A program made the position numbers and the translations under genes. Below, in pieces: positions 2,220 through 63,767 of a stretch of 64,000 bases of DNA. The notes under the pieces were generated by a model, which saw only the letters and a program-made list of their open reading frames with translations, was not told the origin of the DNA and ran no database searches. Origin of the DNA: Haliotis cracherodii (Eukaryota). Position 1 is the first letter of the stretch, and each line of letters opens with the position of its first letter. The stretch spans positions 57,350,001 to 57,414,000 of the forward strand of contig NW_027266265.1 in the NCBI RefSeq assembly GCF_022045235.1, given 5' to 3'.

Positions 2220-5200
2220 GTGAGTAGTGTTCAAGAGGCTGGGTCTGAGGGTGAGGTCTGGTCGCTGGATCTGATGGCTGGGTGTGATGGCAGGGATTGA
2301 TAGCTGGGTCTGAGAGTGGGGTCTGATATCTGGGTCTTATAGCAGAGTCTGATAGCTGGGTCTGATATCGGGGTCTGAGGGTGAGGTCTGGTAGCTGGGT
2401 CTGATGGCAGGGTCTCATAGCTGGGTCTGTAAGTAGCAAGAGGTGACTATTAACCATTGGATGACTGTGGAGATACCCTGAATGGTTCTTCAGCAACCCA
2501 TGCTTTTCATAGGAGGTGACTAAGCTTACAGACTGCCGTCATATAGCTAGAATATTGCGGAGTGTTGTGTTAAACAACAATCAAATGAAATTAACTGCTG
2601 GGACTTAGTACTACACTGCTTTGAAACGATAGTCTCTGTGGTCTAATTGATAGAGCACCTGCCCAGAGAGCAGAGGTCTTTAATTGGATCCACTGCTGCA
2701 TCATACCAAAAGACATTACAAAATGGTACTTATTGTTACCCTGCCTGATGTTTGGCTTTAAAGGGGTAAAACAAGGACTGGTTGGTGTAGAAACAGTATA
2801 CTGTGTCTGAGTGGGGTATCCATGTTAAACGGTGTCATTAGATCTTAGTAGACTTGTACAAGCAGCCACACACACACGCATGTCGCTATGTGATTGCAGT
2901 AATCTTTAACACGATGTTCGAGAATGCTTCCAGAATGCCTTAAATGAATTAACTCCGGTGCCACTGATTGACTTTTATCCATACTTTTGTGCATGAGATT
3001 TAGCACATTCTTTCCTGTTTGTTTTGAACTATTTTTGAGATTCCGTGTCTCATGTTCAAGGGGGTATTGGTGGCCACAGGCCTTTAAGACTTTTAGATTC
3101 ACTGTTCACTCACTTGTTTTAATCTGACCGATAGTTGGCACGCTGTCCTATTTCTAAGTTTTCTGTTTTCCTTTCAGATCTTGCAAGCCATGGGGAAGTC
3201 ATATCACCCAGGTTGTTTTCGATGTTGTATTTGCAACGAGTGTCTGGATGGCGTTCCCTTCACGATCGACGTTGATAACAAGATCTACTGTGTGGCAGAT
3301 TATCACAGGTTTGTCAGCACCGCACCATTCCTGGTTGTTCTACCTCATGTATTGTGTTGTTTCAATCTTTTCAAAACTAAATGCTTTAAAAACCACTCGA
3401 CAAAGATTATGTATTTTTTTCTCCTTTCTTTTAAATATTGTTGTTCTATTACCCTGTTTACACTATATTTATGGGATAATCCTAACAATTTTCAATGTTT
3501 TCAGAACAAATTTGACAAATACAATTTTTCAAATGCATTTAACTTACTTTTGCTTATTATATTTTGAACTATCAACTTTTTCTAGTTAAATGTTTTTGTA
3601 CAGGAGGACTTGAAGTGTTCTTTGTGTTGTTTTAAACAACGTGTTTATGATTCTCGTCCATTGTTTCAGAGTGTATGCTCCCAAGTGTGCAGCGTGTGGA
3701 CACGCCATCACCCCAGTTGATGTGAGTTGACTAGTAGACACTGACGGAGGAACTAACCTCACATACCTGGGAACCCATCAGTGGGAACATGGTCATATTG
3801 TCATTGTACCAACATGAAACAGTGTGGATTTATCAACTGTATTGAGGGAAACTTTTCAGTTGTGCAGACATTTCACAAATCTGTTCAAGGGTCTAGGTTA
3901 ATGTTTCATCTCTGAAAATATCTAGTTTTAAGAGAAACAAGCAACTACATTTAAATTGAAAAGGAGCCCTTGAACCTGTGGAAAATCTAGACTTGCTTCA
4001 TTTAGGGATTACAGTAAGGTCGGGTCAGTCGTGTAGCCTAGTGGTTGAAACGTTCAACATACCGAAGACCCGGGTTCGATTTCCCACAATCATGGGTACA
4101 ATGTGTGAAGCCCATTTCTGGTCCCTAAACAAAGCTCATTGCTAAAAGTGGTGTAAAACCATTCTCACTCACAGTAAGGGCTGGGCAGAAGGGAACATAA
4201 ATTGTTCCAGGGACTGTGGGACAGACTATTCAAGGGGCCTACAAAAGGTGTTAGTATTTTCTACAACTGCTACTAATTAGTTGAATTGGGGTTCAATTCC
4301 CCACATAGGTACAATGTGTGAAGTCCTTTTCTGGTGTCCTCTGACGCGTTATTGCTGGAATATTGCCAAAAGCTCTCTCCTGAGAACTGTGTTGTATATA
4401 TGACGTATTTGCTGTTGTGTTGTATATATGATTTATTTGCTGTTATGTTGTAACAGGGTACAGAGGAGACTGTGCGGGTCGTCTCTATGGACAAGGACTT
4501 CCATGTCGACTGTTATCATTGTGAGGTAAGAGTTATCTCCCTTTTCAATCCTAACGCATCGTCATAGCGACATCCATCATCATGTCAACTTGCAGACTAA
4601 CCCCCCAAAACACTGAGATGTCTCTGTCAGAATCTGTGTCACACATTACTTAGACAGGAGATGGTTAGACTTTGAAAGAAAAACTTAGCACCCACGGAAC
4701 CTTGTGTTCTTTGAGTACAAATGACACATTGAATAAAACAAACAGTTTACATCCAGTTCAAGTAATTTAATTGACATCATGCTAATTCTGAAGATCTGTT
4801 ATCACTCCTTTGAATGGTTCTTATGATCCTATATTACAAAACTATTATTTCATCATTGCCTGGAATCCTGTCTTTCGGTTATCATCACACAATAAAATCT
4901 TCAGATTTTCAACCAAAGTCTTCTTCACTGTTAACTATCCATAAGTTGTGCAAGTACAATAGATCTTAGGGCTCCTTGGTGATATGACTGGCAAGACGTC
5001 TGATGAGTAGAGACATCTCAAGCATCAGTCGTGCACTAACCTGAGTATTGTATCAGTGTCTGTATGTCGATGCATAGCTATAGAGGAAGAGTGGATGTGG
5101 GTAAGAGAGCGGATATGTTGATCAACCATGGTAGCACCAGGCATGGAGGCGGATAGCTTGCATCGTAGGACTAGCTAGACCACGACTTGTCGATGTAACA

Positions 5201-8200: not shown

Positions 8201-11200
8201 ATTCCTGAGTACATGGTGTAGAACATATTGAATAATCCTGTGTATTCCTGAGTACATGGTGTAGAACATATTGAATATTCCTGTGTATTCCTGAGTACTT
8301 GGTGTAGAACATATTGAATAATCCTGTGTATTCCTGAGTACATGGTGTATAACATATTGAATATTCCTGTGTATTCCTGAGTACTTGGTGTAGAACATAT
8401 TGAATAATCCTGTGTATTCCTGAGTACATGGTGTATAACATATTGAATATTCCTGTGTATTCCTGAGTACTTGGTGTAGAACATATTGAATAATCCTGTG
8501 TATTCCTGAGTACATGGTGTAGAACATATTGAATATTCCTGTGTATTCCTGAGTACATGGTGTAGAACATATTGAATAATCCTGTGTATTCCTGAGTACA
8601 TGGTGTAGAACATATTGAATATTCCTGTGTATTCCTGAGTACTTGGTGTAGAACATATTGAATAATCCTGTGTATTCCTGAGTACATGGTGTAGAACATA
8701 TTGAATATTCCTGTGTATTCCTGAGTACTTGGTGTAGAACATATTGAATAATCCTGTGTATTCCTGAGTACATGGTGTATAACATATTGAATATTCCTGT
8801 GTATTCCTGAGTACTTGGTGTAGAACATATTGAATAATCCTGTGTATTCCTGAGTACATGGTGTATAACATATTGAATATTCCTGTGTATTCCTGAGTAC
8901 TTGGTGTAGAACATATTGAATAATCCTGTGTATTCCTGAGTACATGGTGTAGAACATATTGAATATTCCTGTGTATTCCTGAGTACATGGTGTAGAACAT
9001 ATTGAATAATCCTGTGTATTCCTGAGTACATGGTGTAGAACATATTGAATATTCCTGTGTATTCCTGAGTACTTGGTGTAGAACATATTGAATAATCCTG
9101 TGTATTCCTGAGTACATGGTGTATAACATATTGAATATTCCTGTGTATTCCTGAGTACTTGGTGTAGAACATATTGAATATTCCTGTGTATTCCTGAGTA
9201 CTTGGTGTAGAACATATTGAATATTCCTGTGTATTCCTGAGTACTTGGTGTATAACATATTGAATATTCCTGTGTATTCCTGAGTACTTGGTGTAGAACA
9301 TATTGAATATTCCTAAGTACATGGTGTAGAACATATTGAATATTCCTGTGTATTCCTGAGTACATGGTGTAGAACATATTGAATATTCCTGTGTATTCCT
9401 GAGTACATCGTGTAGAACATATTGAATAATTTTCATGGAATATGATGTGTATTCCTTGTTAAGTATCAACATATGCATATCATTGTATCAGTGATACTTA
9501 AATATATATTTACTGTACATTGTATTTGAATCCATTTCAACTACATTTACTTATCAATGAAACACTTAGCTGTTCACTAATTGTTTCTAACTATTCAATA
9601 CGGAATGATTGTGCAACCAAAGACGGATATCCACTATAATGAATATGTATGTGATAAAAGTATTTACTGAACCTCTTCTACCCCAGGCTACATTCTAGTA
9701 GACTGTTGGTATATACACAGTATCACTTTACTAGCACACTGGCTACTGGTTGCCACATTGTTAGGGTTGAAGCCAATATTGTTCCTATATGCATGACATC
9801 ACGCATTTACTCAGCATGTCACTAGGGCATGACGCCCATATCACACACGTCATGAGTCTGTCATGCCTAGGGAGGACCATGTATGTATTGTATGTGTTGT
9901 GCTACTAGCTGATTAACACTGAACACTTTTAAACATTGACATTTTCTTAAAAGGACTGTAGTCTCATAAGCTAGGATTAGATCTGATTTCGACTGGCAAA
10001 ACTTTCTTTGACACAGCTTGTAATCAAGTAACATACTAAACTGGATGAATAATTAAGTTTGCAATTGACATTTCCTCAATACATCTTTTAGTTTTCGATC
10101 CACACCAAACAGACACACTATGATGTAACTGAAATACTGTTCTAAGCATCGTCAAAACAAACTCACTGACTCGTCAATAACACCAATGTTGAGACAGACT
10201 TTTGTTAGAAAGCCAGTATTTTACATTAACTAAACATGAAATCAGTTGAATGCTGAAGTTCAATTCCCTCCTAAACACAATGCCCTCTGGTTTGTGCAAC
10301 ATCGGGGGCACGAGAGTTGTGGACATGACCTGTTGTAAGAGTAACACACACAAGCCTGCATCTGATCGAATGCCTGGTATATGAACACTAATCTGTGAAA
10401 ATAACGTTCCTGTGGTGTGATTAACTTGCCTGTGCTGCCATCTGTCTGTACTGCTGATCTAGACTTAACAGTATCAGACCTCCTATCTGGGTAGTTAGCA
10501 GTAGAACTCATGGAACCGGCATAGCCATGTTATGTGATGGGAGTAGCTGTTCAAGTAGATTCTATATTACGTAACATACAAATTTTAAAAAAAAAATTGA
10601 AACATATTTGCTTCTTTTGAAGTATTATTTTTCTCTTTTTAAAAATAATTTAATACATTATCTTTATTAAATTAATAGAAGATGATGTAGTGGAGAGTGA
10701 TTATTGTTTAACGCCGCATCAGCAATCTTGCAGCTATTCATGGCGAAAGAAGATACTGTAATATAATTTTATCTATTTTTTACACTTAACCTTTTTATCT
10801 GAATTATTTTATTTGAATTTGAATTGTCAGGTTTTATCAATAATTGGTGTCCCGATTTGTAACTTGTATTATGTGTTTCAGGACTGTGGTATCCAACTCA
10901 CAGACGAACCAGACAAGCGATGTTATCCACTTGAGGAGCACCTGTTCTGCCGAGGCTGTCACATCGCGAGACTCAACATCCAGTACCCTGATGAACAGTT
11001 TTACATAGACCCACTCACATTCAACATTCAGAAAAAGTCGGATCGACATGGAGGTTCAGGGATCATCACAGTGGCGCCATCTAGCTATGCAGCAGTTGCT
11101 ATTAACACCGGGTCCATACCCATTATAAACTCGGACAGAAATCGGGGAGGGGAGGAGATTCAAAATGGAGGCCATAATTTCGATTACCAATATGGTGGCC

Positions 11201-11280
11201 CTCCTCCCTATGCTGCCCCGAACAAACTGACACAAGGCCCACCGAAGCCGGGTACCAAATATCACATCACAGACTTATAG
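2157..11280 (+). CDS. WTIP: Ajuba/LIMD1/WTIP-family LIM protein, 3' part of gene (5 exons; 5' exons outside window)
   Basis: Exons 2157-2219, 3178-3308, 3670-3721, 4457-4525, 10882-11280 join in frame via GT-AG introns: [132 protein letters not shown]..., i.e. LIM2 and LIM3 of the WTIP/LIMD1/Ajuba subfamily as recalled. Confidence 0.93.
2237..2430. repeat. Degenerate ~21-bp tandem repeat just after a donor site
   Basis: gctgggtctga-type units. Confidence 0.8.
3178..3308 (+). CDS. WTIP: WTIP-like exon (LIM2)
   Basis: tttcag|ATCTTG...CACAG|gtttgt; [16 protein letters not shown]...YCVADYH. Confidence 0.95.
3670..3721 (+). CDS. WTIP: WTIP-like exon (LIM3 start)
   Basis: tttcag|AGTGTAT...GTTGAT|gtgagt; [17 protein letters not shown]. 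Confidence 0.93.
4020..4170 (+). mobile_element. tRNA-derived SINE, family 2
   Basis: gtagcctagtggtt A box, gggttcgatt B box, ctcactc tail, TSD acagtaagg (4011-4019 / 4171-4179). Confidence 0.85.
4457..4525 (+). CDS. WTIP: WTIP-like exon (LIM3)
   Basis: taacag|GGTACA...TGTGAG|gtaaga; [23 protein letters not shown]. Confidence 0.93.
5862..6016. repeat. 22-bp minisatellite, 7 copies
   Basis: acgatggtgagggagcatatat. Confidence 0.95.
7948..9430. repeat. 43-bp minisatellite, ~34 copies
   Basis: gagtacatggtgtagaacatattgaatattcctgtgtattcct; explains ORFs 7824-9478. Confidence 0.97.
10882..11280 (+). CDS. WTIP: WTIP-like last coding exon (end of LIM3 plus C-terminal tail)
   Basis: tttcag|GACTGTGGT...TTATAG; [27 protein letters not shown]...KYHITDL*. 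Confidence 0.93.
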   Translation, partial: DCGIQLTDEPDKRCYPLEEHLFCRGCHIARLNIQYPDEQFYIDPLTFNIQKKSDRHGGSGIITVAPSSYAAVAINTGSIPIINSDRNRGGEEIQNGGHNFDYQYGGPPPYAAPNKLTQGPPKPGTKYHITDL

Positions 11281-18866: not shown

Positions 18867-46494
<27,628 letters not shown>

Positions 46495-51100: not shown

Positions 51101-54100
51101 ATAATTTCAGATGATGGTTTTATATCTTGGGAAGAGTTCATTGCCTTCTTTGCTGATGGCGTGATGGGAAAAGAAGAACTGAGAGCTTTGTTCAACGAGA
51201 TCGACACGCACAACACTGGGTACAGTAACTTGTTCCTGTTACCGACATCACCACGCACACTGCGACATCTAGCATATCTTTCTTCAACATGAGCGATCAA
51301 CACGCACACTGCGACATCTAGCATATCTTTCTTCAACATGAGCGATCAACACGCACACTGCGACATCTAGCATATCTTTCTTCAACATGAGCGATCAACA
51401 CGCACACTGCGACATCTAGCATATCTTTCTTCAACATGAGCGATCAACACGCACACTGCGACATCTAGCATATCTTTCTTCAACATGAGCGATCAACACG
51501 CACACTGCGACATCTAGCATATCTTAAACATGAGTGATCACCACGCACACTGCGACATCTAGCATATCTTTCTTCAACATGAGCGATCAACACGCACACT
51601 GCGACATCTAGCATATCTTAAACATGAGTGATCACCACGCACACTGCGACATCTAGCATATCTTTCTTCAACATGAGCGATCACCACGCACACTGCGACA
51701 TCTAGCATATCTTAAACATGAGTGATCACCACGCACACTGCGACATCTAGCATATCTTTCTTAAACATGAGCGATCACCACGCACACTGCGACATCTAGC
51801 ATATCTTTCTTAAACATGAGCGATCAGCACGCACACTGCGACATCTAGCATATCTTTCTTAAGCATGAGCGATCAACACACACACTGCGACATCTATCAT
51901 ATCTTTCTTAAACATGAGCGATCAACACGCACACTGCGACATCTAGCATATCTTTCTTAAGCATGAGCGATCAACACACACACTGCGACATCTATCATAT
52001 CTTTCTTCAACATGAGCGATCAACACGCACACTGCGACATCTAGCATATCTTAAACATGAGTGATCACCACGCACACTGCGACATCTAGCATATCTTTCT
52101 TAAACATGAGCGATCACCACGCACACTGCGACATCTAGCATATCTTTCTTAAGCATGAGCGATCAACACACACACTGCGACATCTATCATATCTTTCTTA
52201 AACATGAGCGATCAACACACACACTGCGACATCTAGCATATCTTTCTTAAACATGAGCGATCAACACGCACACTGCGACATCTAGCATATCTTTCTTAAA
52301 CATGAGCGATCAACACGCGCACTGCGACATCTAGCATATCTTTCTTCAACATGGGTGGAATGAGTATTTTCAGGTTTTCTAGAAAATGAATTTACTTGTG
52401 AAAAATGAAGTTCTTGGTTTTGTAGATTTGTCCATGAGATATTTTCTTTCGAAAGTAGCATATTTGAACTATATTTTGCAGTCTTCCATATACAAACTTA
52501 ATGTCAGGTTGCATGATTTTCAAGTGTTGCTTTGAAGAGCCTCGTTGTAGGGTTCTAGGTCAGACCTGGTTGATCTGTGATGAGAAACAACATCTGTGTT
52601 GTGTGTGGCCTTGTGTCTATACTACTCTGCACAAACACAATAAGGGAAATATTTTGGTGTGGAATTTGTCTGGAACAAACTCTTGAAACAGTGTACAGTG
52701 TCTGGGTAAACACCAAGTGGAAACCCTCTTTATTGAGGGTATTAGATCATGTGTTATTCACATCAGATCTCACTTGTGAACTATGATTTGATGCTAATAT
52801 CTGTGTTATTGCCTGCATAGTATCACTGTAACATACATACATAACAGTTTACAACAATGTAAGGATATCTACATCAGATCAGAATATAATGAACTCCTGT
52901 CTATGATGCAAAAGATTGCTATTACTGCCTGCATGGTAACACTGTAACATACATATATGTATATAAATAACAGTTTAAGACATAAGGATAGGTGAGGTGG
53001 GGTTGAACATCGTGTACAAGATTTTGAAATTTTATAGGGAAGTGCGTGCGTGCATTTGGAGTTTTGAAACTACTGTGTATCATGGTACAAGGTAACATTA
53101 CAATCTGGTACCATTTGAGGGCTATAATTCTGAACCAGCTTTCAATGCTGCAGTTTTGCTACAAATCAGAACTTAATAAAACTGACAGTAGTCAACATTT
53201 TTGTCTCATTGACCAGGTACAAACTCTGAGGACGTGTGAAGTAAGGTTTACGCTAATCCTCTGCAGTTGTTTTAAAACGAATTATTTTTAAGGCTGCTAT
53301 TACTAGTTCGCTTGATTGTAAGGTATGGAAAGTACGTAAGGAATACAAGATATCCTTATGTGGTGTCTCACCATTAACATTTGACTCTGCGAGGGTTCAG
53401 CATTATAGTCCATGCACACGCAGACATTTGGACCAACTCATTGGTTCAACCAGAAACATGACGTACATTCTGTATTGCGATGGTTTGGAACGTGTTTAAA
53501 AGGATGGGGGATACTGATGACATGCCTGCTCCCTCTAATCCAGCAACATCGACACGGGAGAACTGTGCACCTACGTCGCAACGCACCTGGGGGACTTCCA
53601 GCAGATCTACGGCACCCTGGAGGATCTGTCGGCCAAAGTGACGGGGGTGCTCTTCTCCACATCGAAGGTACTGCAGCTCATCCGGAGGACTCCATGTAGA
53701 CTGGTCATGTTCAGTGGTGTATAGTACTTGCTTTACAGATCTCAGACATAATGCGATGGTTGTTCAGTGGTGTACAGTACTTGCTTTACAGATGTCAGAC
53801 CACAGCGATAGTTGTTCAGTGGTGTACAGTACTTGCTTTACCGATCTCAGACCACAGCGATGGTTGTTCAGTGGTGTACAGTACTTGCTTTACCGATCTC
53901 AGACCACAGCGATGGTTGTTCAGTGGTGTACAGTACTTGCTTTACAGATCTCAGATGCCTGAATTTACGAGGGCGCAGATGAATATGTTGAGAGAAATCT
54001 TTTATTTCAGAGTTATGAGGGGGCACATGAATATGTTGAGTGTAATCTGTTATTTCAGAGTTACGAGGGGGGCATATGAATATGTTGAGTGAAATCTGTT

Positions 54101-57100
54101 ATTTCAGAGTTATAAGGGGGCACATGAATATGTTGAGTGTAATCTGTTATTTCAGAGTTATGAGGGGGCACATGAATATGTTGAGTGAAATCTGTTATTT
54201 CAGAGTTACGAGGGGGCAGATGAATATGTTGAGTGTAATCTGTTATTTCAGAGTTACGAGGGGGCAGATGAATACGTTGAGTGTAATCTGTTATTTCAGA
54301 GTTACAAGGGGGCAGATGAATACATTGAGTGTAATCTGTTATTTCAGAGTTACGAGGGGGCAGATGAATACGTTGAGTGAAATCTGTTATTTCAGAGTTA
54401 GGAGGGGACAGATAAATACGTTGAGTGTAATCTGTTATTTCAGAGTTACGAGGGGGCAGACAGAAAGGAGAAGTTTGTGACCCGGTTCCTGATGCGGGAG
54501 ATACAGAACCAGTTGTCGGCCCTGCAGCAGCCGCTAGAGGCAGCATCAGAGGAACTCGACCTCCAGGCGCGCAGAGAGAGGTAGGGGATCTACTCACCTC
54601 AGTCACAAGATTCTGTTTTATTAGAAAAACCAAAACATTTGAAGCTGTATTGGAGCTATATAGGCTATGAACGGTTCCAGTGTTAAAATATTATATTTCA
54701 TGTTTGCTGAAACTTTTTCTCTAGTTTGTGTCAGTAAGTCAGTGAGAATATAGATTAATGCCACAAGAATTATTTTTGGAACATAAAAAATCATCAGGGT
54801 CATTTTCATGAAAATGTAGAAAAAATTGTTCGCTAGCTCGGTGTTTGTTTTTGTTTTTGGCATTGTTTGAGTAAGTTGTGTAACGGGAAACTATTATGTT
54901 ATGTAGTAAGACTCTTCTGTACCCTGTCCCACAATGCCATGTTGGGGCTATCACTGGAGTTACTTTCCTTCGGCATATTTTGAGGTCAAAGGTGAAGGTC
55001 ACGAGATAGAAACAAAATGACCCCAAATGGTTTTGTTACACTTTCTTAATAGTATGAAAGTATTTATCATTAAGCGTGGTTCTTGCCCTCTCCGGGATGG
55101 GGCCCTGCCTTGAAAATGTTTGGATCAAGATGACTCAGGCTTTTGTTTTTGTCAGTTTCTGGGGCACGGTTAACACAATATGTATGGAAGATAGTAGTTG
55201 CTCGTGACTTAAAACTCCTACCACATGGCATGTCTGTCAGAGGTCAAGGTTATCTGTGAGGTTATTGTGTATCATTCATTGCTAGTTCCTGCCCTGCAGC
55301 TGTGTTACTTGCACAGTCCTGACACTTGGTGGTTGTTGCATCTTGTTTAAGTCTGAGAGTTATGGAAGTGACATAGGTATGTTTTGGGAGCTTGGAGGAA
55401 ATAGTGTTGAAGGGGATGCAAACATCTCAGTTTCAAAAGTCAACAGCTACTTTTTGTTAAAAATTGCTATTTGTAATTTTTTGTGTTATAACCCATCAAA
55501 GATGAAGCAGTTGGTCAAAATATAATGCATTCAAACTATATTTACTGGACAGCCTGAAGTTAGCTGTGGGTTAGTTATTCGTTTTTTCTAATAATGAAAA
55601 ACAAGCCAGAAGCGGATTCATTATTCAAAGTCTCTATATATGAATGTTGGTCGGGGTCGAGTGATTCACTTTCTGACAGTCATAACTGGTAATCCTCAGG
55701 GCGGACATACAACCTGTTGAGGTAGAGGCCATGAAGAAGACAGGAGCCACCATCCCAGGTAACCTTCAACTACCCGACACTGCCAGATAAACACCTATAG
55801 GAGAGTCACCCTGAAGACCCAGGTTTGATTCCCCACATGGGTACAATATTGATATTGTGATATTGCTGAAATATTGCATTACTATAAAAAGCGGCGTAAA
55901 ACCATACTCACTCACTCACTCACAAATTGTATGGGGCGTAGGACAATCACACATTGTACAGATGATTTAAGACTCCAAACTACCCAGGTGTGTTTTATTG
56001 TCTCTTCCCATACAGGTTCAAGCATTTAGGCATCAGAGCCCTGTTTGAGGATTTTCAATTTACGACAGGCACTGCTTGTTGGAGATTTGATTTTAAATAC
56101 ATCTCCAGTAAGACACAAGGTTGGACTTAAATTTGGCGGTTTAGAAGGGTAATAAAGTTTTCTCTACCCCCTGCTAGTGTCCTTGTGCTGTAGCTTTTAT
56201 AGTTCAGGGCAAAGCTGTTTCAGTACACATGTGGGTAGTGCAAACCTTATTGTTAATAATATTTTTTTGGGAAAATACCATACATCATCGATTAACATAA
56301 AAAACTTAGAACTCAAAGTATTCCTTCTGTGTTTAACTCACTCACTCACTCACTCGGTGTTTCAGGTCGGATTGTCCGGCGAGCCAAGCGACAGGTCAGC
56401 TCCCAGAGCACAACTAGTGAAGGTAGGTCAACCTGGGGACATTTATGAGATGCTTGCTCAGGATGTAAGTTCCATGTGACATAATGACACAATAACTCCG
56501 TCACTGTCAATATGTTCAAGTCTTTGACTGGCATGTAGATGTGATACACATAAGGAAGAGAATTTATGGATGTCAACTTCTTTATTATGAGGAACACAGT
56601 GTTTCGGAGCATATGCTTACTCCTTCATCAGGTGAATGAATGCTACGAGGTAAGGAAGATATATATGTACCTGGAAGAACATCCATGCTAATTACCCCTG
56701 GCTGCCTGTTTGCCCAATGTCCATTGCCTATCACCAATCAGTGATAATGTAAGTCCTGGCCTCCAGTTGTCCATCGCGATCACCTACCAGTGCCAAATAT
56801 CTGTTAGAAGTTATGAGTGCCAATCAGCTGTTGGCTTCCCTTGTTAAGTCTCTGCCTTTTGTTATCTTAATACTTTTGTTGTTCTTACATGTCGATATAT
56901 ATATTCTCTGCCTTATAGCATTTATTCACCTGATGAAGGAATAAGTATATACTCCGAAACGTGTGTTCCTGATAATAAAGAAGTTGACATCCATAAGCTC
57001 TTTTCCTCATTGACAAATTATCTATTCACTCCAAAGGAAAAATATGGAATATATTTGTATTGGAATCCTGTTATCATACACGTCAAGGAACTAAGATGTT

Positions 57101-60100
57101 TATTTTTTCTTGCCATAATTTTGAGAGGTAATTTGAATATTTTTGTGATAAGTGACATAGGACAGAAATTAAAAAGTTAATTATTTATAAAGGTTCTTTA
57201 TAAGTATACCACACAAAGGAAGTTAAAGAACAACCAATTCTTTCACATCACAATGGTTAATCTGTCAAGCGTTCTTTAACATCTTTTGAGTAGAAATTAT
57301 ACACATATATATGTGTGTAATTCTTATATGATATTGCCGGGACTATGCTTGATACTTTCATACCGCCTCTGACTTCTGCTAATACGACCGTCTATAACTT
57401 GATGTCTGCATGTGATTCTGCATGATACATCTTTTATCATGTTTATGGACTATCTGCTCATTATTCTATTAAAAGTGATAATTAATAAAGGGTATCTTTT
57501 TGCTTATTCAATATGTTATATATTATATAAGTAATTGATTTCAGTTGTCATATTGTAAAAAACTGAACACATTTATTGTTTTTACAATGACCTGCAGCAG
57601 TTGAGAATATTGTGGAGGGTAAATATTTTCAAGTAGTATATTTTTCAATTTTCTTCAAATTTTATCTTCTGACTGTCTGTCTCAGCCTCTGCTGCTCATG
57701 CTTGTGGTGGTTTGTTGGAGGTGGCAGTTATAGAGTATTATACCACGACTTTATATACTAATGAATACGTATCTCAATACATTTGGAGAATAGTTAATTC
57801 CGTTGTATTGCATTTTTCAAAATCATGCAAATTTCATCTTCTTGGCAAAGATATTTACAAGTCAAATTGAAATGATGAAATTCAGAAATTAGCAACTGAT
57901 CCCTGTGACTGCAAAGGTGAAACTAGTTGCGTCCAGCTACCTGTATATAATAGTCTGTTAGGAATATGTCGTGACCATAGCAACATCCAACAAAATCGTG
58001 GATGACTAAAGAACATATCAATCTTTTAAGTAAGGATAAGAATTTATGGATGAACAACTTCTTTATTACAATTAAGAGCGACGTTTCGGTGTAGGTTCTA
58101 ACACCGTTATCAAGCAAGTGATTTACAGAGTGCAGTAAGCTCTTAATTGTAATATAGAAGTTGTTCATCCATAAATTCTTATCCTTACTTAGTACTCCAA
58201 CTTCTAAATGCCTATCAAAGAAGTTATCAATCTTTTGATGAACGTATCGCAATACATCATGCCACATTATTGCAATACGACAGAAAACATTATTCTTTGT
58301 GTAACACAAACATGGATTCCTGGTACTGACAGAAAAGTTAGATTCAGCGTTGAAACTATTGACATAATGTCCCATTCCATAATACTAACAGACCACAGAC
58401 CACTCATGTGTTTTCTGTGCGGGGATTCCGGGTTAGAATAGGTCCCCAGTATCCCACACTTGTAAGAGAAGACTAAATAGGTGATCAGACTCTGCTACCT
58501 CGTCTTCAGTAATCTATGCAGGCTGTAAGAGGTGACTTAATGGATGGGAGGTCAGACTTGGTGACCTGGCCCCTGTAGAGATTCTGGGTTAGAATTAGTC
58601 TTCAGTAATCTATGCAGGCCAAGAGGTGACTAAATCGATGTCTGGTTGGTTTTGGTGACCTGGTTGATAGTTTCTTGTACTGTACAGTGTGAATTGTTGT
58701 TATTAATATCCATCACTGGATCATCTGGCCCAGACCATATAGCTGCAATATTTCTGAGGGTGGCATAAAACAAAGGACACACAGTTTCTTGGCTGATTGC
58801 ATGTCATGACAGGGAGTGATCTCATGCTTTCAATCACGTGTCTGTCTGGTCCAGACTTGATTGTGTACAGGCCGCTGTCTTGTCACTTCAGTATTGCTGA
58901 CAGAAGTGTTAACCAACATTCACTCACTCACTCTGGTTTATTGTTGGTTTATTCTGGTTATTGTCAAAATGTTTGCAAAAACCTGTGGTGTGGTTGATAA
59001 AGACCTTTGCCAAAAAGAAGCCAGATGAAAGTTATGTAACACATATAATATAATATCTAGTTGTGTATGATAACATTATTAATCACATATAGCCTCTTTG
59101 ATAACTTTGTGTGCTAATTCTATTTTGCTACTTCTATTTTGATATCTTGCAAACCTATGCATGTTTAACTGTGTTTCATACATTCTAACTTCTACAGTCT
59201 TTCTGGCTCTATCAGCTGTGCTTATTTCTTGCGCATCACCTTCTGTCACCATGGTTACACATGTGTAAACTTTGGTCTTTGTTTGATTTCAATCAATTAT
59301 TTGTCCTAATCAATCAGTGCAGTGCCACACAGTATCATGTCTTCAAGCCCCCTGTTGTCACAATGAAATTGTAATACTGATTGTCAGAGGAAATTTATCT
59401 GTTAGTTCTCATTAAAGAAAGTAATGATGTATGTTTCTCAAGGAAAATATGAAGCAATTGAATACAATTTTTTTTTATAATTCAACAACCAGTGTTGTTT
59501 GGGACGACAGACATGAACATTGGGGACATGAACCCTCGGCACCTTTCTGCATCTACAAATGTTCTGAATCAGGATGCAAAAATGCCTCACATGGCATTAT
59601 ACAGGTGTTACAGCAGTGTGTCTGTATTGTGCAGGGTGTTACAGCAGTGTGTCTGTATTGTGCAGGGTGTTACAGCAGTGTGTCTGTATTGTGCGGGGTG
59701 TTACAGCAGTGTGTCTGTATTGTGCAGGTGTTACAGCAGTGTGTCTGTATTTTGCAGGGTGCTACAGCAGTGTGTCTGTATTGTGCAGGGTGTTACAGCA
59801 GTGTGTCTGTATTGTGCAGGGTGTTACAGCAGTGTGTCTGTATTGTGCAGGATGTTACAGCAGTATGTCTGTATTGTGCAGGGTGTTACAGCAGTGTGTC
59901 TGTATTGTGCAGGGTGTTACAGCAGTGTGTCTGTATTGTGCAGGTGTTACAGCAGTGTGTCTGTATTGTGCGGGGTGTTACAGCAGTGTGTCTGTATTGT
60001 GCAGGGTGTTACAGCAGTGTGTCTGTATTGTGCAGGGTGTTACAGCAGTGTGTCTGTATTGTGCAGGGTGTTACAGCAGTGTGTCTGTATTGTGCAGGTG

Positions 60101-63100
60101 TTACAGCAGTGTGTCTGTATTGTGCAGGGTGTTACAGCAGTGTGTCTGTATTGTGCAGGGTGTTACAGCAGTATGTCTGTATTGTGCAGGGTGTTACAGC
60201 AGTGTGTCTGTATTGTGCAGGGTGTTACAGCAGTGTGTCTGTATTGTGCAGGGTGTTACAGCAGTGTGTCTGTATTGTGCAGGGTGTTACAGCAGTGTGT
60301 CTGTATTGTGCAGGGTGTTACAGCAGTGTGTCTGTATTGTGCAGGGTGTTACAGCAGTGTGTCTGTATTATGCAGGGTGTTACAGCAGTGTGTCTGTATT
60401 GTGCAGGGTGTTACAGCAGTGTGTCTGTTTTGTGCAGGTGTTACAGCAGTGTGTCTGTATTGTGCAGGGTGGTACAGCAGTGTGTCTGTATTGTGCAGGT
60501 GTTACAGCAGTGTGTCTGTATTGTGCAGGGTGTTACAGCAGTGTGTCTGTTTTGTGCAGGTGTTACAGCAGTGTGTCTGTTTTGTGCAGGTGTTACAGCA
60601 GTGTGTCTGTATTATGCAGGGTGGTACAGCAGTGTGTCTGTATTGTGCAGGTGTTACAGCAGTGTGTCTGTATTATGCAGGGTGTTACAGCAGTGTGTCT
60701 GTATTGTGCAGGGTGTTACAGCAGTGTGTCTGTTTTGTGCAGGGTGTTACAGCAGTGTGTCTGTATTGTGCAGGGTGTTACAGCAGTGTTAACTGTGTCT
60801 GTATTGTGCAGGGTATGGTAGCCAGGTGTTGACGCTGCAGGTGGACAGGCTGGAGAATCTCATAGACAAACTGGAGTCTAAGGTAATTCCTTGCTTTTAT
60901 CGTAACTCAAAAGAAAAATGTGCATGCAGTTACCATGGTTACCATTTGATAAATAATTGTAAAATGTTCTTTTCATTGATATTCTTATTGTGTTCCGAAT
61001 CATTTAACCTGCAATGCTAATTTTGTACAAATGGTGTATTGTTTGTGTTTTCAGGTGAACTTCGACAACTTTGTTGATGAGGAGGTTGTGTATGAGCCTG
61101 AGTGCCTGGTGCGTACAAGCTGAAGATCTTTTTTGTATAGGTCACATTTATTTAAAATCCACCTAAAATCATCATTGTGTAATTTTGTTTTGCTACAAAA
61201 TAGTGTATTAGGATAAAAAAATAATAGTCTTGTTTCTCAGGAACCACCCGCATGATCATAAAGTCTGCCGCATATTTTGTTTTAATTTCTATTTAAAAAA
61301 AAATATCAAAATCCTAATACTTAAACACAATGCACAAAAAAATGAAAATGGAAACAAAACGAAACGTGCAATGAACTTTATGATGATGTGGGCAGTGCAG
61401 ATGTTGATGCTACGATGATGCTACTTGTGTCTTCATCTAGTGTTTTTGCAGATGTTGATGCTACGATGATGCTACTTGTGTCTTCATCTAGTGTTTTTGC
61501 AGATGTTGATGCTACGATGATGGTACTTGTGTCTTCATCTAGTGTTTTTGCAGATGTTGATGCTATGATGATGCAACTTGTGTCTTCGTCTCGTGTTTTT
61601 GCAGATGTTGGAGCTGGGATGATGCAACTTGTGTCTACATCTCGTGTTGTTGCAGATGTTGGAGCTGGGATGATGCAACTTGTGTCTACATCTCGTGTTG
61701 TTGCAGATGTTGATGCTATGATGATGCAACTTGTGTCTAAATCTCGTGTTGTTGCAGATGTTGATGCTATGATGATGCAACTTGTGTCTAAATCTCGTGT
61801 TGTTGCAGATGTTGATGCTACGATGATGCAACTTGTGTCTAAATCTTGTGTTGTTGCAGATGTTGATGCTACGATGATGCTATTTGTGTCTACATCTTGT
61901 GTTTTTGCAGATGTTGATGCTACGATTATGCAACTTGTGTCTAAAACTTGTGTTGTTGCAGATGTTGATGCTACGATGATGCAACTTGTGTCTAAATCTT
62001 GTGTTGTTGCAGATGTTGATGCTACAGAGGAACTTTGAAGTAAAGGTGGAGGAGCTGGACAGTTTCAAGTCGAGTCTCAGGGCTTATGTGGAGTCTACCC
62101 AGGGTGTGGGTGGATGTCGCAAGTAAGATCATGTTGTTGATAATTGCGGCCTAAATTTATCCATGTATGTCTCTGAAATGCATTCGTTCATGATTCCGAA
62201 ATCAATACTATGTAAGATATATTATGATGCAAATTTCTTTTTATCATAAGTCAGCCTTCTTATTTAACATGTTTAAGATATGCAGGGATACGATATCTGG
62301 AAGAACAACTTCATTATTACATTTAGGAGCAACGTTTTGGTCTAGATTCTAACAATATATCAAACAAGTGGAGAATATACACAGAAACGTTGTTCCTAAA
62401 TGTACGAAGTTGTTCTTCCACATATCGTATCCCTACTGAGTAGTCCATCTTTTAAATGCCTCTCAAAGAAGTTATGTTTAAGGTCGATAATAGAGTCCTT
62501 GGTACTGCTACCATACCATGCTTTTCAAAGTCTGAAGTCTTCATGTTCATCTTGGAGCAGAGATTAATGAGATAGTGTTTTTAATTTCATGAGTAGGGCT
62601 ACTCATGTTAGTTAATGACACGGGCCAGGGTTGGCATGACCTATGTTTTGGTGATACGTTACTTTGGTGATTTCCTGTACCTCTGTGTGATAGCGCCTCT
62701 GTGTGATAGCATCTCAATGTTGTCTACTTTGCAACCAAATGAATCAGGTCGTCCGGCTCTGTAACTTGGTTGATCGTACCCTGATAACGTAGATTGTTGC
62801 TCACAATAATGATAACTGTATTGTTTGGTTGAGACTTGATTATTTACAGGATGTTATCATATAGCTGTAATATTGTTGAGTACAGAGTTAAACACAAACA
62901 TGCTCACAAAGATTGATGAGAGTACTAGGGTTTGATCATTATATAGTCTGGGATTTTGTGTTAAACTTAATAGATTTTCATTCAGCACTTCAGTACAGGC
63001 AGTGTTTTACTCTGAGTGGATCCAAACNNNNNNNNNNNNNNNNNNNNNNNNNNNNNNNNNNNNNNNNNNNNNNNNNNNNNNNNNNNNNNNNNNNNNNNNN

Positions 63101-63400
63101 NNNNNNNNNNNNNNNNNNNNNNNNNNNNNNNNNNNNNNNNNNNNNNNNNNNNNNNNNNNNNNNNNNNNTGGGTGTTTTAGAACCTGACAAATTATATAAA
63201 AGATATTAAATCCTAGCCCCCCCCCCCCCCCCCCCCCCCCCAACAGGTGACTTTCCCTGTAGCAGCTCCTACACAGGAACCATGTCTGTCAGTGTGACTT
63301 TGTGACACTTGTGCTGTTTCAGTGTGAGTGTACGATCATTCAGAGACAGCAACAAGCTGACCTTGTACGAGATCTGGAATACAGGAGCAGACAAGAAAAG
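48121..63400 (+). CDS. NECAB1: N-terminal EF-hand calcium-binding protein (NECAB family: EF-hands, coiled region, ABM domain); continues past window
   Basis: Exons 48121-48168, 50533-50557, 51111-51219, 53544-53667, 54444-54580, 55700-55758, 56366-56422, 60812-60882, 61055-61108, 62013-62122, 63323-63400 join in phase: [69 protein letters not shown]...[15 protein letters not shown]...[15 protein letters not shown]...LYEIW. Matches recalled NECAB motifs; NECAB1/2/3 paralogue identity not resolvable. Confidence 0.92.
49580..50105. repeat. 15-bp minisatellite, ~35 copies
   Basis: gccattgtcatacag; explains the IQAIV and GHCHT ORFs. Confidence 0.95.
50254..50491 (+). mobile_element. SINE family 1 copy
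   Basis: ctgtgcagagttgtgtcccttgggcatgccagaaacctatgattgtg...ccaactgactcactgactcac. Confidence 0.85.
50533..50557 (+). CDS. NECAB1: NECAB exon 2 (25-nt microexon)
   Basis: tgccag|GTGTTCAGAAGAGCAGACAAGGATG|gtgggt; VFRRADKD. Confidence 0.88.
51111..51219 (+). CDS. NECAB1: NECAB exon 3 (EF-hands)
   Basis: tttcag|...|gtacag; [36 protein letters not shown]. Confidence 0.94.
51250..52351. repeat. 49-bp (45-bp variant) minisatellite, ~23 copies
   Basis: cacgcacactgcgacatctagcatatctttcttcaacatgagcgatcaa; starts ~30 nt after the NECAB exon 3 donor. Confidence 0.97.
53544..53667 (+). CDS. NECAB1: NECAB exon 4
   Basis: atccag|...|gtactg; [41 protein letters not shown]. Confidence 0.92.
53708..53955. 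repeat. 52-bp tandem repeat, ~5 copies
   Basis: gttcagtggtgtacagtacttgctttaccgatctcagaccacagcgatggtt. Confidence 0.93.
53965..54460 (+). repeat. 48-bp tandem array, 10 copies, each containing the NECAB exon 5 acceptor
   Basis: tgaatatgttgagtgtaatctgttatttcag|AGTTACGAGGGGGCAGA. Confidence 0.97.
54444..54580 (+). CDS. NECAB1: NECAB exon 5
   Basis: tttcag|...|gtaggg; [45 protein letters not shown]. Confidence 0.92.
55700..55758 (+). CDS. NECAB1: NECAB exon 6
   Basis: cctcag|...|gtaacc; [19 protein letters not shown]. Confidence 0.82.
55808..55923 (+). mobile_element. SINE family 2 fragment
   Basis: gaagacccaggtttgattccccacatgggtacaat...gcggcgtaaaaccatactcactcactcac. Confidence 0.75.
56366..56422 (+). 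CDS. NECAB1: NECAB exon 7
   Basis: tttcag|...|gtaggt; [19 protein letters not shown]. Confidence 0.85.
56553..57007. mobile_element. Palindromic element with two inverted CTGATGA...GAAAC cores
   Basis: Inverted arms of ~95-130 bp around a ~200-bp spacer. Confidence 0.75.
58031..58226. mobile_element. Related palindromic element (second subfamily)
   Basis: taaggataagaatttatggatgaacaacttc / gaagttgttcatccataaattcttatcctta, plus tail cttctaaatgcctatcaaagaagtta; another copy at 62284-62475. Confidence 0.7.
59604..60813 (+). repeat. 30/31-bp tandem array, ~39 copies, ending in the NECAB exon 8 acceptor
   Basis: ggtgttacagcagtgtgtctgtattgtgcag. Confidence 0.97.
60812..60882 (+). CDS. NECAB1: NECAB exon 8
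   Basis: gtgcag|...|gtaatt; [24 protein letters not shown]. Confidence 0.88.
61055..61108 (+). CDS. NECAB1: NECAB exon 9
   Basis: tttcag|...|gtgcgt; [18 protein letters not shown]. Confidence 0.85.
61396..62025 (+). repeat. 51-bp tandem array, ~12 copies, containing the NECAB exon 10 acceptor
   Basis: ...gtgttgttgcag|ATGTTGATGCTAC gatgatgcaacttgtgtctaaatctt. Confidence 0.97.
62013..62122 (+). CDS. NECAB1: NECAB exon 10 (ABM domain)
   Basis: ttgcag|...|gtaaga; [36 protein letters not shown]. Confidence 0.9.
63028..63168. other. Assembly gap (N run)
   Basis: 141 N; poly-C run nearby at ~63217-63241. Confidence 0.99.
63323..63400 (+). CDS. NECAB1: NECAB exon 11 (ABM domain)
   Basis: tttcag|...|gtggat; [25 protein letters not shown]. 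Confidence 0.88.
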
Positions 63401-63767
63401 GTGGATGTCATCCGTGGTGTTTCTTCACTTACATTTTGCTATCATAACTACAGCTTCAGCTTCAGGACACCCTGGGCTACAGTTTCTATAAATAAAATCG
63501 TCTGTTTTATTCAGAGGTGGTAAATGTGATTTGGTGCCTCTGACTGACCAATCAAAATAAAGTAATTTCCAAATACTGGTTTACAACTTACTCAAATCTA
63601 TCTGTCAGGCTATTTCATCGTGTCGTAGTCGAAGTCGTCACTCTGTAGGAATCGAAGTCCAAACTAATACATCGTGTCACTCAAGGGTATCAACAAATCT
63701 CAGATATTCAGGGCTGGTGACCATGAAACAGAAACATCTTGAGGGCCTCATTTCATTACCTGACTAC

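What the first reader, a model, noticed from the sequence alone, without database searches (positions are those of the whole stretch)
59604..60832. Only the last of ~39 acceptor copies has a 7-nt insert that is both a branch-point motif and an in-frame stop
Seen: units read cagcagtgtgtctgtattgtgcag, but the final one reads cagcagtgTTAACTGtgtctgtattgtgcag. TTAAC (60789-60793) fits the yUnAy branch consensus about 20 nt before the true AG (60810-60811). The array is stop-free in all three + frames. The TAA at 60790-60792 closes the exon frame, and the other frames close at 60819-60821 and 60830-60832. Inference: one short element marks the correct acceptor and makes every decoy-spliced mRNA an NMD target.
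Basis: partly seen in the sequence, partly recalled or inferred. Interest (0 to 1): 0.8.

Follow-up and report, generated by a model that had tools for sequence, protein, structure and literature searches.

The report
Splice-acceptor minisatellite with one branch-point copy
The last 1.2 kb of an intron in an EF-hand (NECAB-like) gene consists of 38 extra copies of the intron's own end; this repeat type ("mirage" minisatellite) is already known, and only the real, RNA-confirmed splice site keeps a 7-base block with a strong branch-point motif, which gives a testable idea of how the cell picks it.

Summary
Observation confirmed. There are 39 units of 30/31 nt (59604-60814).

RNA-run contigs from three species labels and the spacing in related proteins show that AG 60810-60811 is the acceptor in use. 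It opens exon 60812-60882 of a single-copy NECAB-like gene.

The array occurs only at this locus. It is an acceptor-side "mirage" minisatellite, a kind described in amphioxus, with a donor-side human counterpart in F7. This scan has already reported the same kind elsewhere in this genome. This window holds three more acceptor-side arrays, two of them in the same gene.

A60792 in the block is the only adenine near any of the 37 AGs that can pair fully (6/6) with U2 GUAGUA. Every decoy reaches 3/6 at best. The block is also present in runs about 5% diverged.
  - The block is more likely the ancestral branch site kept by the edge copy than an insert.
  - Only 13 of 36 decoys depend on its TAA.
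  - Lack of stops in the array is trivial.
  - The other three arrays have no such mark.
  - Array-to-exon RNA still makes up 20-25% of exon depth.

No branch point, decoy use or NMD was measured.

The parts
59604..60814 (+). Minisatellite of 39 units (30/31 nt; the last is 38 nt). It is made of the last ~28 nt of the intron plus AG plus the first 3 nt (GGT) of the exon: an acceptor-side 'mirage' array.
   Evidence: Unique in the 1.18-Gb genome. Flanks hold no degenerate copies.
60780..60811 (+). The authentic (last) unit, the only one with the 7-nt block.
   Evidence: Present with the block in contigs of X1, X11 and X19.
60789..60795 (+). TTAACTG block. TTAAC matches yUnAy. The predicted branch adenine A60792 lies 19 nt before G60811. 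TGTTA[A]C can form 6 of 6 pairs with U2 GUAGUA.
   Evidence: The branch point is inferred, not mapped.
60790..60792 (+). TAA in the exon frame. It would stop the 13 decoy-spliced forms that stay in frame.
60810..60811 (+). AG of the acceptor in use.
   Evidence: Spliced contigs of X11 and X1 start at 60810/60811. The spacing RRAxRQ...VDRL is the same 19 residues as in relative P0009.
60812..60882 (+). Exon h of the NECAB-like gene, (G)[23 protein letters not shown]. It contains the out-of-frame stops TAG 60819-21 and TGA 60830-32.
   Evidence: Differences in other runs at 60849 and 60876 are synonymous (plus my own reading of the codons).
56366..56423 (+). Upstream exon g, (G)[18 protein letters not shown](G). 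It ends ...GAAG in phase 1.
   Evidence: tblastn of relatives; sequence.
56424..60811 (+). Intron g-h (4388 nt). The array forms its last 1208 nt.
61055..61108 (+). Exon i, joined to exon h by a GT..AG joint in three RNA runs.
   Evidence: tables 2 and 5.
53965..54460 (+). Second acceptor-side array of the same gene (48-nt unit: acceptor plus 16 nt of exon e).
61396..62025 (+). Third acceptor-side array of the same gene (51-nt unit: acceptor plus 13 nt of exon j). The 3' copies are identical to the authentic one.
31042..31713 (-). Acceptor-side array in the neighbouring gene (61-nt unit: acceptor plus 17 nt of exon).

Best explanation
This is an acceptor-side 'mirage' minisatellite. The 3' end of intron g-h of a NECAB-like gene (weak pyrimidine/UG tract, CAG, first 3 exon bases) was tandemly amplified in place to 38 extra copies upstream of the authentic site. 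The authentic, exon-adjacent edge copy keeps a 7-nt block, TTAACTG, whose second A (60792) is the intron's branch point: a perfect yUnAy, fully complementary to U2, 19 nt before the AG. The amplified copies descend from a copy that lost this block, through a 7-nt slippage deletion between flanking TG repeats. They therefore carry only a poor branch site. This is why the array could grow without destroying the gene, and why the last AG is the one mainly used. The TAA inside TTAAC is a by-product of the branch motif that happens to fall in the exon frame. Together with two ordinary out-of-frame stops in the exon, it means every decoy-spliced RNA would be prematurely terminated. Shown: the array, its uniqueness, the acceptor in use, the gene, the presence of the block in diverged runs, the U2-pairing contrast and the stop arithmetic. 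Inferred: branch-point use, the direction of the indel, selection, and NMD.
For: Array anatomy. Only locus in the genome. Gene single copy. Acceptor: in X11 and X1 the contig carrying exon h joined to exon i starts at 60810/60811. That is exactly where a k-mer graph would merge the spliced path (exon g ends ...AG) with the unspliced path. Relatives P0009, P0010, P0011 and P0018 (EF-hand pair plus ABM domain) align exon by exon, with the same 19-residue spacing across the junction. U2 proxy: A60792 scores 6/6 and every decoy at most 3/6. Among 2760 background AGs outside arrays, 6.4% reach 6/6 and 9.9% are at or below 3/6. Four of 10 acceptors of this gene reach 6/6 (binomial P 0.0026), so the proxy carries information here. 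Only 0.5-0.9% of adenines score 6/6, so a random 7-nt insert would rarely create one. The block is intact in X1 and X11 RNA contigs and in an X19 DNA contig with 27 differences and 6 gaps over 563 nt. Edge copies escaping homogenisation is described for mirage arrays (PMC3087553).
Against: No lariat or branch-point data. Metazoan branch sites are degenerate: five of ten real acceptors in this gene score only 4/6, and each decoy has GTTAC (UnAy) 24 nt before its AG, so decoys may still work. The three other acceptor arrays in the window show no copy-specific branch-site difference, yet their last copy must be used. RNA running from the array into the exon is 20-25% of exon depth in X11 and X1. 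In X5 the exon contig runs 11 nt into the intron without a break. No outgroup without the array could be fetched, so the direction of the indel is untested.
Confidence: 0.55

Rival explanations
1. Neutral edge variant. The 7-nt difference is an indel in the poorly homogenised terminal unit and does not decide acceptor choice. The last AG is chosen because it adjoins the real exon (exon definition: enhancers and the donor at 60883), as must be the case for the other arrays. Mis-spliced forms are simply lost.
For: The 48-nt, 51-nt and 61-nt acceptor arrays in the same window have authentic copies identical to their decoys in the intron part. Boundary copies escape homogenisation in mirage arrays (PMC3087553). 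In human F7, identical pseudo-donors stay silent through position alone (PMC1557585).
Against: A random indel would rarely create the only 6/6 U2-complementary site at the right distance (per-adenine rate 0.5-0.9%). Decoys fall in the lowest tenth of all AGs for this measure. The block is kept in diverged runs.
Confidence: 0.25
2. A selected 7-nt insertion evolved as one dual-purpose element: a branch point that marks the right acceptor, and an in-frame stop that sends decoy-spliced mRNAs to NMD.
For: TTAAC is a perfect yUnAy 19 nt before the AG. TAA lies in the exon frame. All 36 decoy choices end in a premature stop at least 50 nt before the next junction.
Against: Only 13 of 36 decoys depend on this TAA. 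A TAA in a given frame is a 1-in-3 chance once TTAAC is there. Lack of stops in the array is trivial. Insertion is less parsimonious than loss between TG repeats. No NMD data exist. Array-to-exon RNA is abundant rather than cleared.
Confidence: 0.12
3. The array is a tunable attenuator. Decoy acceptors or slow removal of this intron divert a copy-number-dependent share of transcripts into unproductive RNA and so set NECAB output. The UG-rich units might also bind UG-binding splicing factors.
For: Array-to-exon RNA is 20-25% of exon depth while the next intron has zero depth in the same three RNA runs. There are 39 x GUGUGUCUGUAUUGUG. Several such arrays sit in one gene.
Against: Contigs cannot separate decoy splicing from retention. 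The boundary contig is not broken at 60774|60775, so the nearest decoy is not detectably used. Array depth relative to the boundary is inconsistent between runs. Minisatellites cover 23% of the window, so a by-product is the simpler reading.
Confidence: 0.08

Closest known systems
'Mirage' minisatellites of amphioxus (Adh3, globin BflGb6/BflGb9, troponin C, PGBD5)
   Same: Tandem repeats copied from a gene's own exon-intron boundary, lying against the authentic site. Many copies keep AG/GT signals. Normal splicing persists, and boundary copies escape homogenisation (PMC3087553; PMC3902484).
   Different: A different phylum: earlier scan notes say abalone, which I did not test. The exon part of the unit is only 3 nt, against 13-17 nt in the neighbouring arrays and more in amphioxus. 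Copy number is much higher (39 against 3-6 for the globin genes). Here the authentic copy differs by a branch-site block, a feature not mentioned in the two papers I could read.
Human F7 intron 7 37-bp VNTR (array of pseudo-donor sites)
   Same: A minisatellite whose edge element spans the exon boundary, so that the authentic site adjoins identical silent pseudo-sites. It has been used as a natural model of splice-site choice (PMC1557585).
   Different: It is on the donor side. There the choice is explained by 5'-to-3' scanning that takes the first site, with no sequence difference. Here it is the acceptor side, the last copy is used, and there is a sequence difference.
Competition between duplicated 3' splice sites, and AG scanning from the branch point (classical in vitro work; from my own knowledge, not checked here)
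   Same: The first AG beyond about 10 nt downstream of the branch is used, and branch-site strength and exon context decide between duplicated sites. The block places A60792 so that AG 60811 is the first AG after it.
   Different: Those are engineered duplications of two sites. This is a natural array of 37.
Repeat-created acceptors in expanded CAG tracts
   Same: Tandem repeats that each offer a CAG acceptor and yield repeat-containing RNAs (PMC10614865, abstract listed).
   Different: Those are trinucleotide expansions linked to disease. They are not copies of a gene's own acceptor.

Membership tests
Mirage minisatellite (tandem repeat spanning an exon-intron boundary) | Head-to-tail array of minisatellite-sized units | tested here: met
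   39 units of 30/31 nt, 96% matches.
Mirage minisatellite (tandem repeat spanning an exon-intron boundary) | The unit is copied from the gene's own boundary and includes the splice signal and some exon sequence | tested here: met
   Every unit ends ...TGTATTGTGCAG|GGT, like the authentic junction. Homology stops at 60814, so only 3 exon nt are shared. Further similarity to the exon is not significant (p 0.17). The feature is met, but minimally.
Mirage minisatellite (tandem repeat spanning an exon-intron boundary) | The array lies directly against the authentic, used boundary | tested here: met
   RNA-run contigs and the spacing in relatives place the acceptor at 60811|60812, which is the array's last unit.
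Mirage minisatellite (tandem repeat spanning an exon-intron boundary) | Local origin, not a dispersed satellite or transposon | tested here: met
   Searching the window's own genome with four units finds only this locus.
Mirage minisatellite (tandem repeat spanning an exon-intron boundary) | Regular splicing persists | tested here: inconclusive
   The canonical form is the major one in X11 and X1, but a contig running from the array into the exon has 20-25% of exon depth, and X5 shows no break at the junction. Contigs cannot quantify isoforms.
Mirage minisatellite (tandem repeat spanning an exon-intron boundary) | Length instability or polymorphism | not testable with these tools
   Short-read contigs collapse the array.
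Functional branch-point sequence | yUnAy motif 18-40 nt upstream of the AG, with no usable AG in between | tested here: met
   TTAAC at 60789-93. A60792 lies 19 nt before G60811, and there is no AG between 60787 and 60809.
Functional branch-point sequence | 2'-5' lariat formed at that adenine | not testable with these tools
   This needs lariat reads or RT-PCR.
NECAB family (N-terminal EF-hand calcium-binding protein), for the host gene | EF-hand pair followed by a C-terminal ABM domain | tested here: met
   Window exons hit EF-hand models weakly. Relatives found with exon d carry EF-hand_7 plus ABM and align to 10-11 exons of the window, including the ABM part at 63315-63416.

The most novel reading that the evidence does not exclude
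Junction-copy arrays can grow only when the amplified copy has lost its branch site or meets an early stop. Their copy number then sets how much pre-mRNA is diverted to unproductive, array-containing RNA. That would make these arrays heritable, fast-mutating dials of gene output in a genome rich in them. This locus would be the clearest example: the authentic copy is in the top 6% and the decoys in the bottom 10% for U2 pairing, and about a fifth of the RNA still carries the array.
Probability: 0.12. Interest if true: 0.7.

Novelty: new member of a known kind. Interest (0 to 1): 0.4.

Why it matters
How a spliceosome picks one site among dozens of near-identical neighbours is still discussed, and natural arrays of this kind are ready-made competition assays. 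This locus offers a clean, one-variable contrast: 36 decoys and one authentic site share the same tract and AG and differ by 7 nt that carry a consensus branch site. Three neighbouring arrays with no such difference serve as internal controls. If the branch maps to A60792, and moving the block moves the acceptor, this would show that branch-site strength alone can silence a whole array. It would also explain which junction duplications are allowed to expand. If not, the locus joins the cases where position and exon context decide. The array itself is an ordinary member of a repeat type already described, and the same kind has already been reported by this scan elsewhere in this genome.

Tried and rejected
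- **Alternative acceptor at 60839-40 (gctgcag|GTGGAC):** rejected. RNA contigs run through it to 60810/11, and relatives need the nine residues YGSQVLTLQ.
- **Dispersed satellite or transposon tail:** rejected. The unit is found only here.
- **The array as a coding repeat exon:** rejected. Relatives have no such insert, the canonical junction exists, and all frames end in stops at the array's end.
- **Degenerate older copies in the flanks or in the exon start:** not significant.
- **Recursive splicing through regenerated donors (CAG|GTGTTA):** the donor is weak, and 31-nt units would leave an extra G. Not pursued.
- **Palindrome or hairpin origin of the block (CAGT-GTTA-ACTG):** only 4 bp, judged by eye and not tested.
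- **Word search for transcript-derived protein fragments containing the junction:** no candidates. A blank says little, because only proteins of 41-131 residues were visible.
- **The original mirage paper (PMC117041):** not held.
- **Using array depth against boundary depth to separate decoy splicing from retention:** the ratios disagree between runs (about 6x in X11, about 78x in X1, about 17x in the X19 DNA run), so no conclusion.
Full report
**1. The observation**

The stretch 59604-60814 is a tandem array.
- Tandem Repeats Finder gives period 31, 38.5 copies, 96% matches.
- Anchoring on ACAGCAGT gives 39 units of 30 or 31 nt.
- Unit 39 alone reads ACAGCAGTG-TTAACTG-TGTCTGTATTGTGCAG. No other unit has an indel larger than 1 nt.
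- TTAAC lies at 60789-60793, and A60792 is 19 nt before G60811.
- No stop occurs in any + frame inside the array. The first stops are TAA 60790, TAG 60819 and TGA 60830.

- Units 3 and 12 end in CGG, so there are 36 decoy AGs.
- The lack of stops follows trivially from a unit that contains no stop triplet and whose length is not a multiple of three.

**2. The gene and the true acceptor**

The host gene is NECAB-like.
- Exon-sized open stretches on the + strand between about 48.1 and 63.4 kb hit EF-hand models.
- A whole-library search with exon d (53539-53667) found relatives P0009, P0010, P0011, P0018 and P0014.
- Those relatives have an EF-hand pair and a C-terminal ABM domain. That is the architecture of N-terminal EF-hand calcium-binding proteins (the family name is from my own knowledge).
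- tblastn of these proteins against the window maps 10-11 exons.

I compared exon by exon.

The relevant junction:
- Exon g (56366-56423) encodes (G)[18 protein letters not shown](G).
- Exon h (60812-60882) encodes (G)[23 protein letters not shown].
- The distance from RRAxRQ to VDRL is 19 residues in both the window and P0009. This fits an acceptor at 60811|60812 and rules out the AG at 60839-40.
- The gene is single copy in the 1.18-Gb assembly.

**3. RNA evidence (stretch 60687-61395)**

Three runs guessed to be RNA (X11, X1, X5; three organism labels) behave as RNA.
- They cover 60812-60882 and 61055-61108.
- They have zero depth in the intron between those exons.
- They carry a GT..AG joint 60882|61055.

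X19 behaves as DNA: even depth, and one contig over 60774-61330 with 27 differences and 6 gaps.

In X11 and X1 the contig carrying exons h and i starts at 60810 and 60811.
- Contigs from a 31-mer graph end where two paths merge (my knowledge of the method).
- Exon g ends ...GAAG and the intron ends ...GCAG, so the spliced and unspliced paths share exactly AG. X11 shows this.
- This independently places the junction at 60811|60812.

A second contig (60752/3 to 60839/40) represents the other path, from the array into the exon.
- Its depth is 10.2 against 50.1 in X11, and 35.4 against 140.7 in X1. That is 20-25%.
- The next intron has no depth at all, so this is not general DNA or pre-mRNA background.
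- It reflects either slow removal of this intron or use of upstream decoys.
- The contig is not broken at 60774|60775, so the nearest decoy is not detectably used.
- In X5 the exon contig runs on to 60801 without a break at the junction. I cannot explain this.

All contigs that cross 60789-60795 (X1, X11, X19) contain the block; no 'left out' row is listed there. Exon differences from the window at 60849, 60876 and 61099 are synonymous by my own reading of the codons.

**4. What the array is**

A search of the window's own genome with four units finds only this locus, so the array arose in place. Each unit equals the end of the intron plus AG plus GGT, the first three exon bases. Beyond that, the flanks show no significant similarity to the unit.

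The same construction recurs nearby.
- A 48-nt array ends at the acceptor of exon e and includes 16 nt of exon.
- A 51-nt array ends at the acceptor of exon j and includes 13 nt of exon.
- A 61-nt array on the minus strand includes an acceptor plus 17 nt of exon.
- An array starting 25 nt after the donor of exon c has units whose start resembles the exon's end.
- Minisatellites cover 22.9% of the window.

Earlier notes of this scan pointed me to the name 'mirage' minisatellite. I checked the literature.
- They do not prevent regular splicing.
- Their boundary copies are excluded from homogenisation (PMC3087553; PMC3902484).
- The human F7 intron 7 VNTR is a donor-side counterpart, studied as a model of site choice (PMC1557585).

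The kind is therefore known, and the scan has met it before on other DNA of this genome. The notes say abalone; I did not test the species.

**5. The 7-nt block as a branch site**

As a simple proxy, I counted for each adenine how many of the six flanking positions can pair with U2 GUAGUA, with the adenine bulged out.
- A60792 (TGTTA[A]C) scores 6 of 6: four Watson-Crick pairs and two wobble pairs.
- No other adenine in the last 70 nt exceeds 3, and the best site ahead of every decoy AG scores 3.
- Among 2760 AGs outside arrays, 6.4% have a 6/6 site 12-45 nt upstream, and 9.9% have nothing better than 3/6.
- Four of ten acceptors of this gene reach 6/6 (binomial P 0.0026), so the proxy carries information here.
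- The authentic site therefore sits in the top few percent and the decoys in the bottom tenth. The tract and AG are identical in both.
- AG 60811 is the first AG after A60792.

There are caveats.
- Each decoy still has GTTAC (UnAy) 24 nt before its AG.
- Five real acceptors of the gene score only 4/6.
- The three other acceptor arrays have no copy-specific difference: the 51-nt units all carry the same 6/6 site.

A general mechanism, such as exon context and nearness to the real donor, must therefore exist as well.

**6. Insert or remnant**

Only 0.5-0.9% of adenines score 6/6, so a random 7-nt insertion would seldom produce one.
- The block is flanked by TG on both sides (GTG-TTAACTG-TG), the usual setting for a slippage deletion.
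- Edge copies of such arrays are known to escape homogenisation.
- I therefore favour this account: the authentic copy keeps the ancestral branch site, and the copy that was amplified had lost it. This would also explain why the array was tolerated.

This is inference.

**7. The stop and NMD part**

Exon g ends in phase 1. Of the 36 decoy choices, 13 stay in frame and stop at TAA 60790, 12 stop at TAG 60819 and 11 at TGA 60830.
- All of these stops lie at least 50 nt before the junction at 60882, and further junctions follow.
- The arithmetic holds, but only a third of the decoys depend on the block.
- Once TTAAC is present, a TAA in the exon frame is a 1-in-3 coincidence.
- No data bear on NMD, and array-containing RNA is not rare.

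**8. Verdict**

- The structure is a new member of a known repeat kind.
- The 'branch-point mark' is a plausible and well-posed hypothesis. I put it at about 0.55-0.6, in the form 'ancestral branch site kept only by the authentic copy'.
- The 'built-in NMD switch' is mostly arithmetic.
- The N run at 63028-63168 was left untouched.

Noticed in passing
window 61396-62025 (+): A 51-nt x 12.4 array ends exactly at the acceptor of NECAB exon j (62012|62013). Its units include the first 13 exon bases. The 3' copies are identical to the authentic one, and each unit has an in-frame TGA in its exon-like part.
   Followed up: partly
window 51247-52353 (+): A 49-nt x 23 array starts 25 nt after the donor of exon c. 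The unit start (ATCAACACGCACACTG) resembles the exon's last bases (ATCGACACGCACAACACTGG), but the GT is missing. This may be a donor-side junction-copy array with disarmed donors.
   Followed up: no
window 53708-54460 (+): The 776-nt intron between exons d and e consists almost entirely of two arrays: 52 nt x 4.8 and 48 nt x 10.3. The second spans the acceptor of exon e.
   Followed up: partly
window 1-64000: About 24 minisatellite arrays cover 22.9% of the window. In the NECAB gene at least three array ends coincide with splice acceptors. My rough estimate for random placement is about 0.5 such coincidences.
   Followed up: partly
window 61191-61395: Very high summed contig depth in all four runs (up to about 13,000 in the RNA runs and 40,000 in the DNA run), with many variant contigs and loose ends. 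This looks like a fragment of a highly repeated dispersed element inside intron i-j.
   Followed up: no
window 60801-60880 (run X5): In the organism-B run, the contig that carries the exon h-exon i joint continues 11 nt into the intron and ends at 60801, with no break at the acceptor. That run also has a non-synonymous C>T at 60833 (Thr to Met). Unexplained.
   Followed up: no
window 60783: G>T in the contigs of X11, X1 and X19 removes the AG at 60782-83 (ACAGCAG to ACATCAG) in the last unit only. This is a second difference specific to the edge copy in those runs.
   Followed up: no
window 56336-56356: An (ACTC)n microsatellite, preceded by GTTTAAC, fills the branch-point zone of the exon g acceptor. 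An earlier scan note mentions SINE (ACTC)n tails in branch-point zones elsewhere in this genome.
   Followed up: no
window 3097-3564 and 10762-11277 (+): Open stretches that look by eye like LIM-domain peptides ([13 protein letters not shown]...; CRGCHIARL), probably exons of a prickle/testin-like gene upstream of the other genes. I did not scan them.
   Followed up: no
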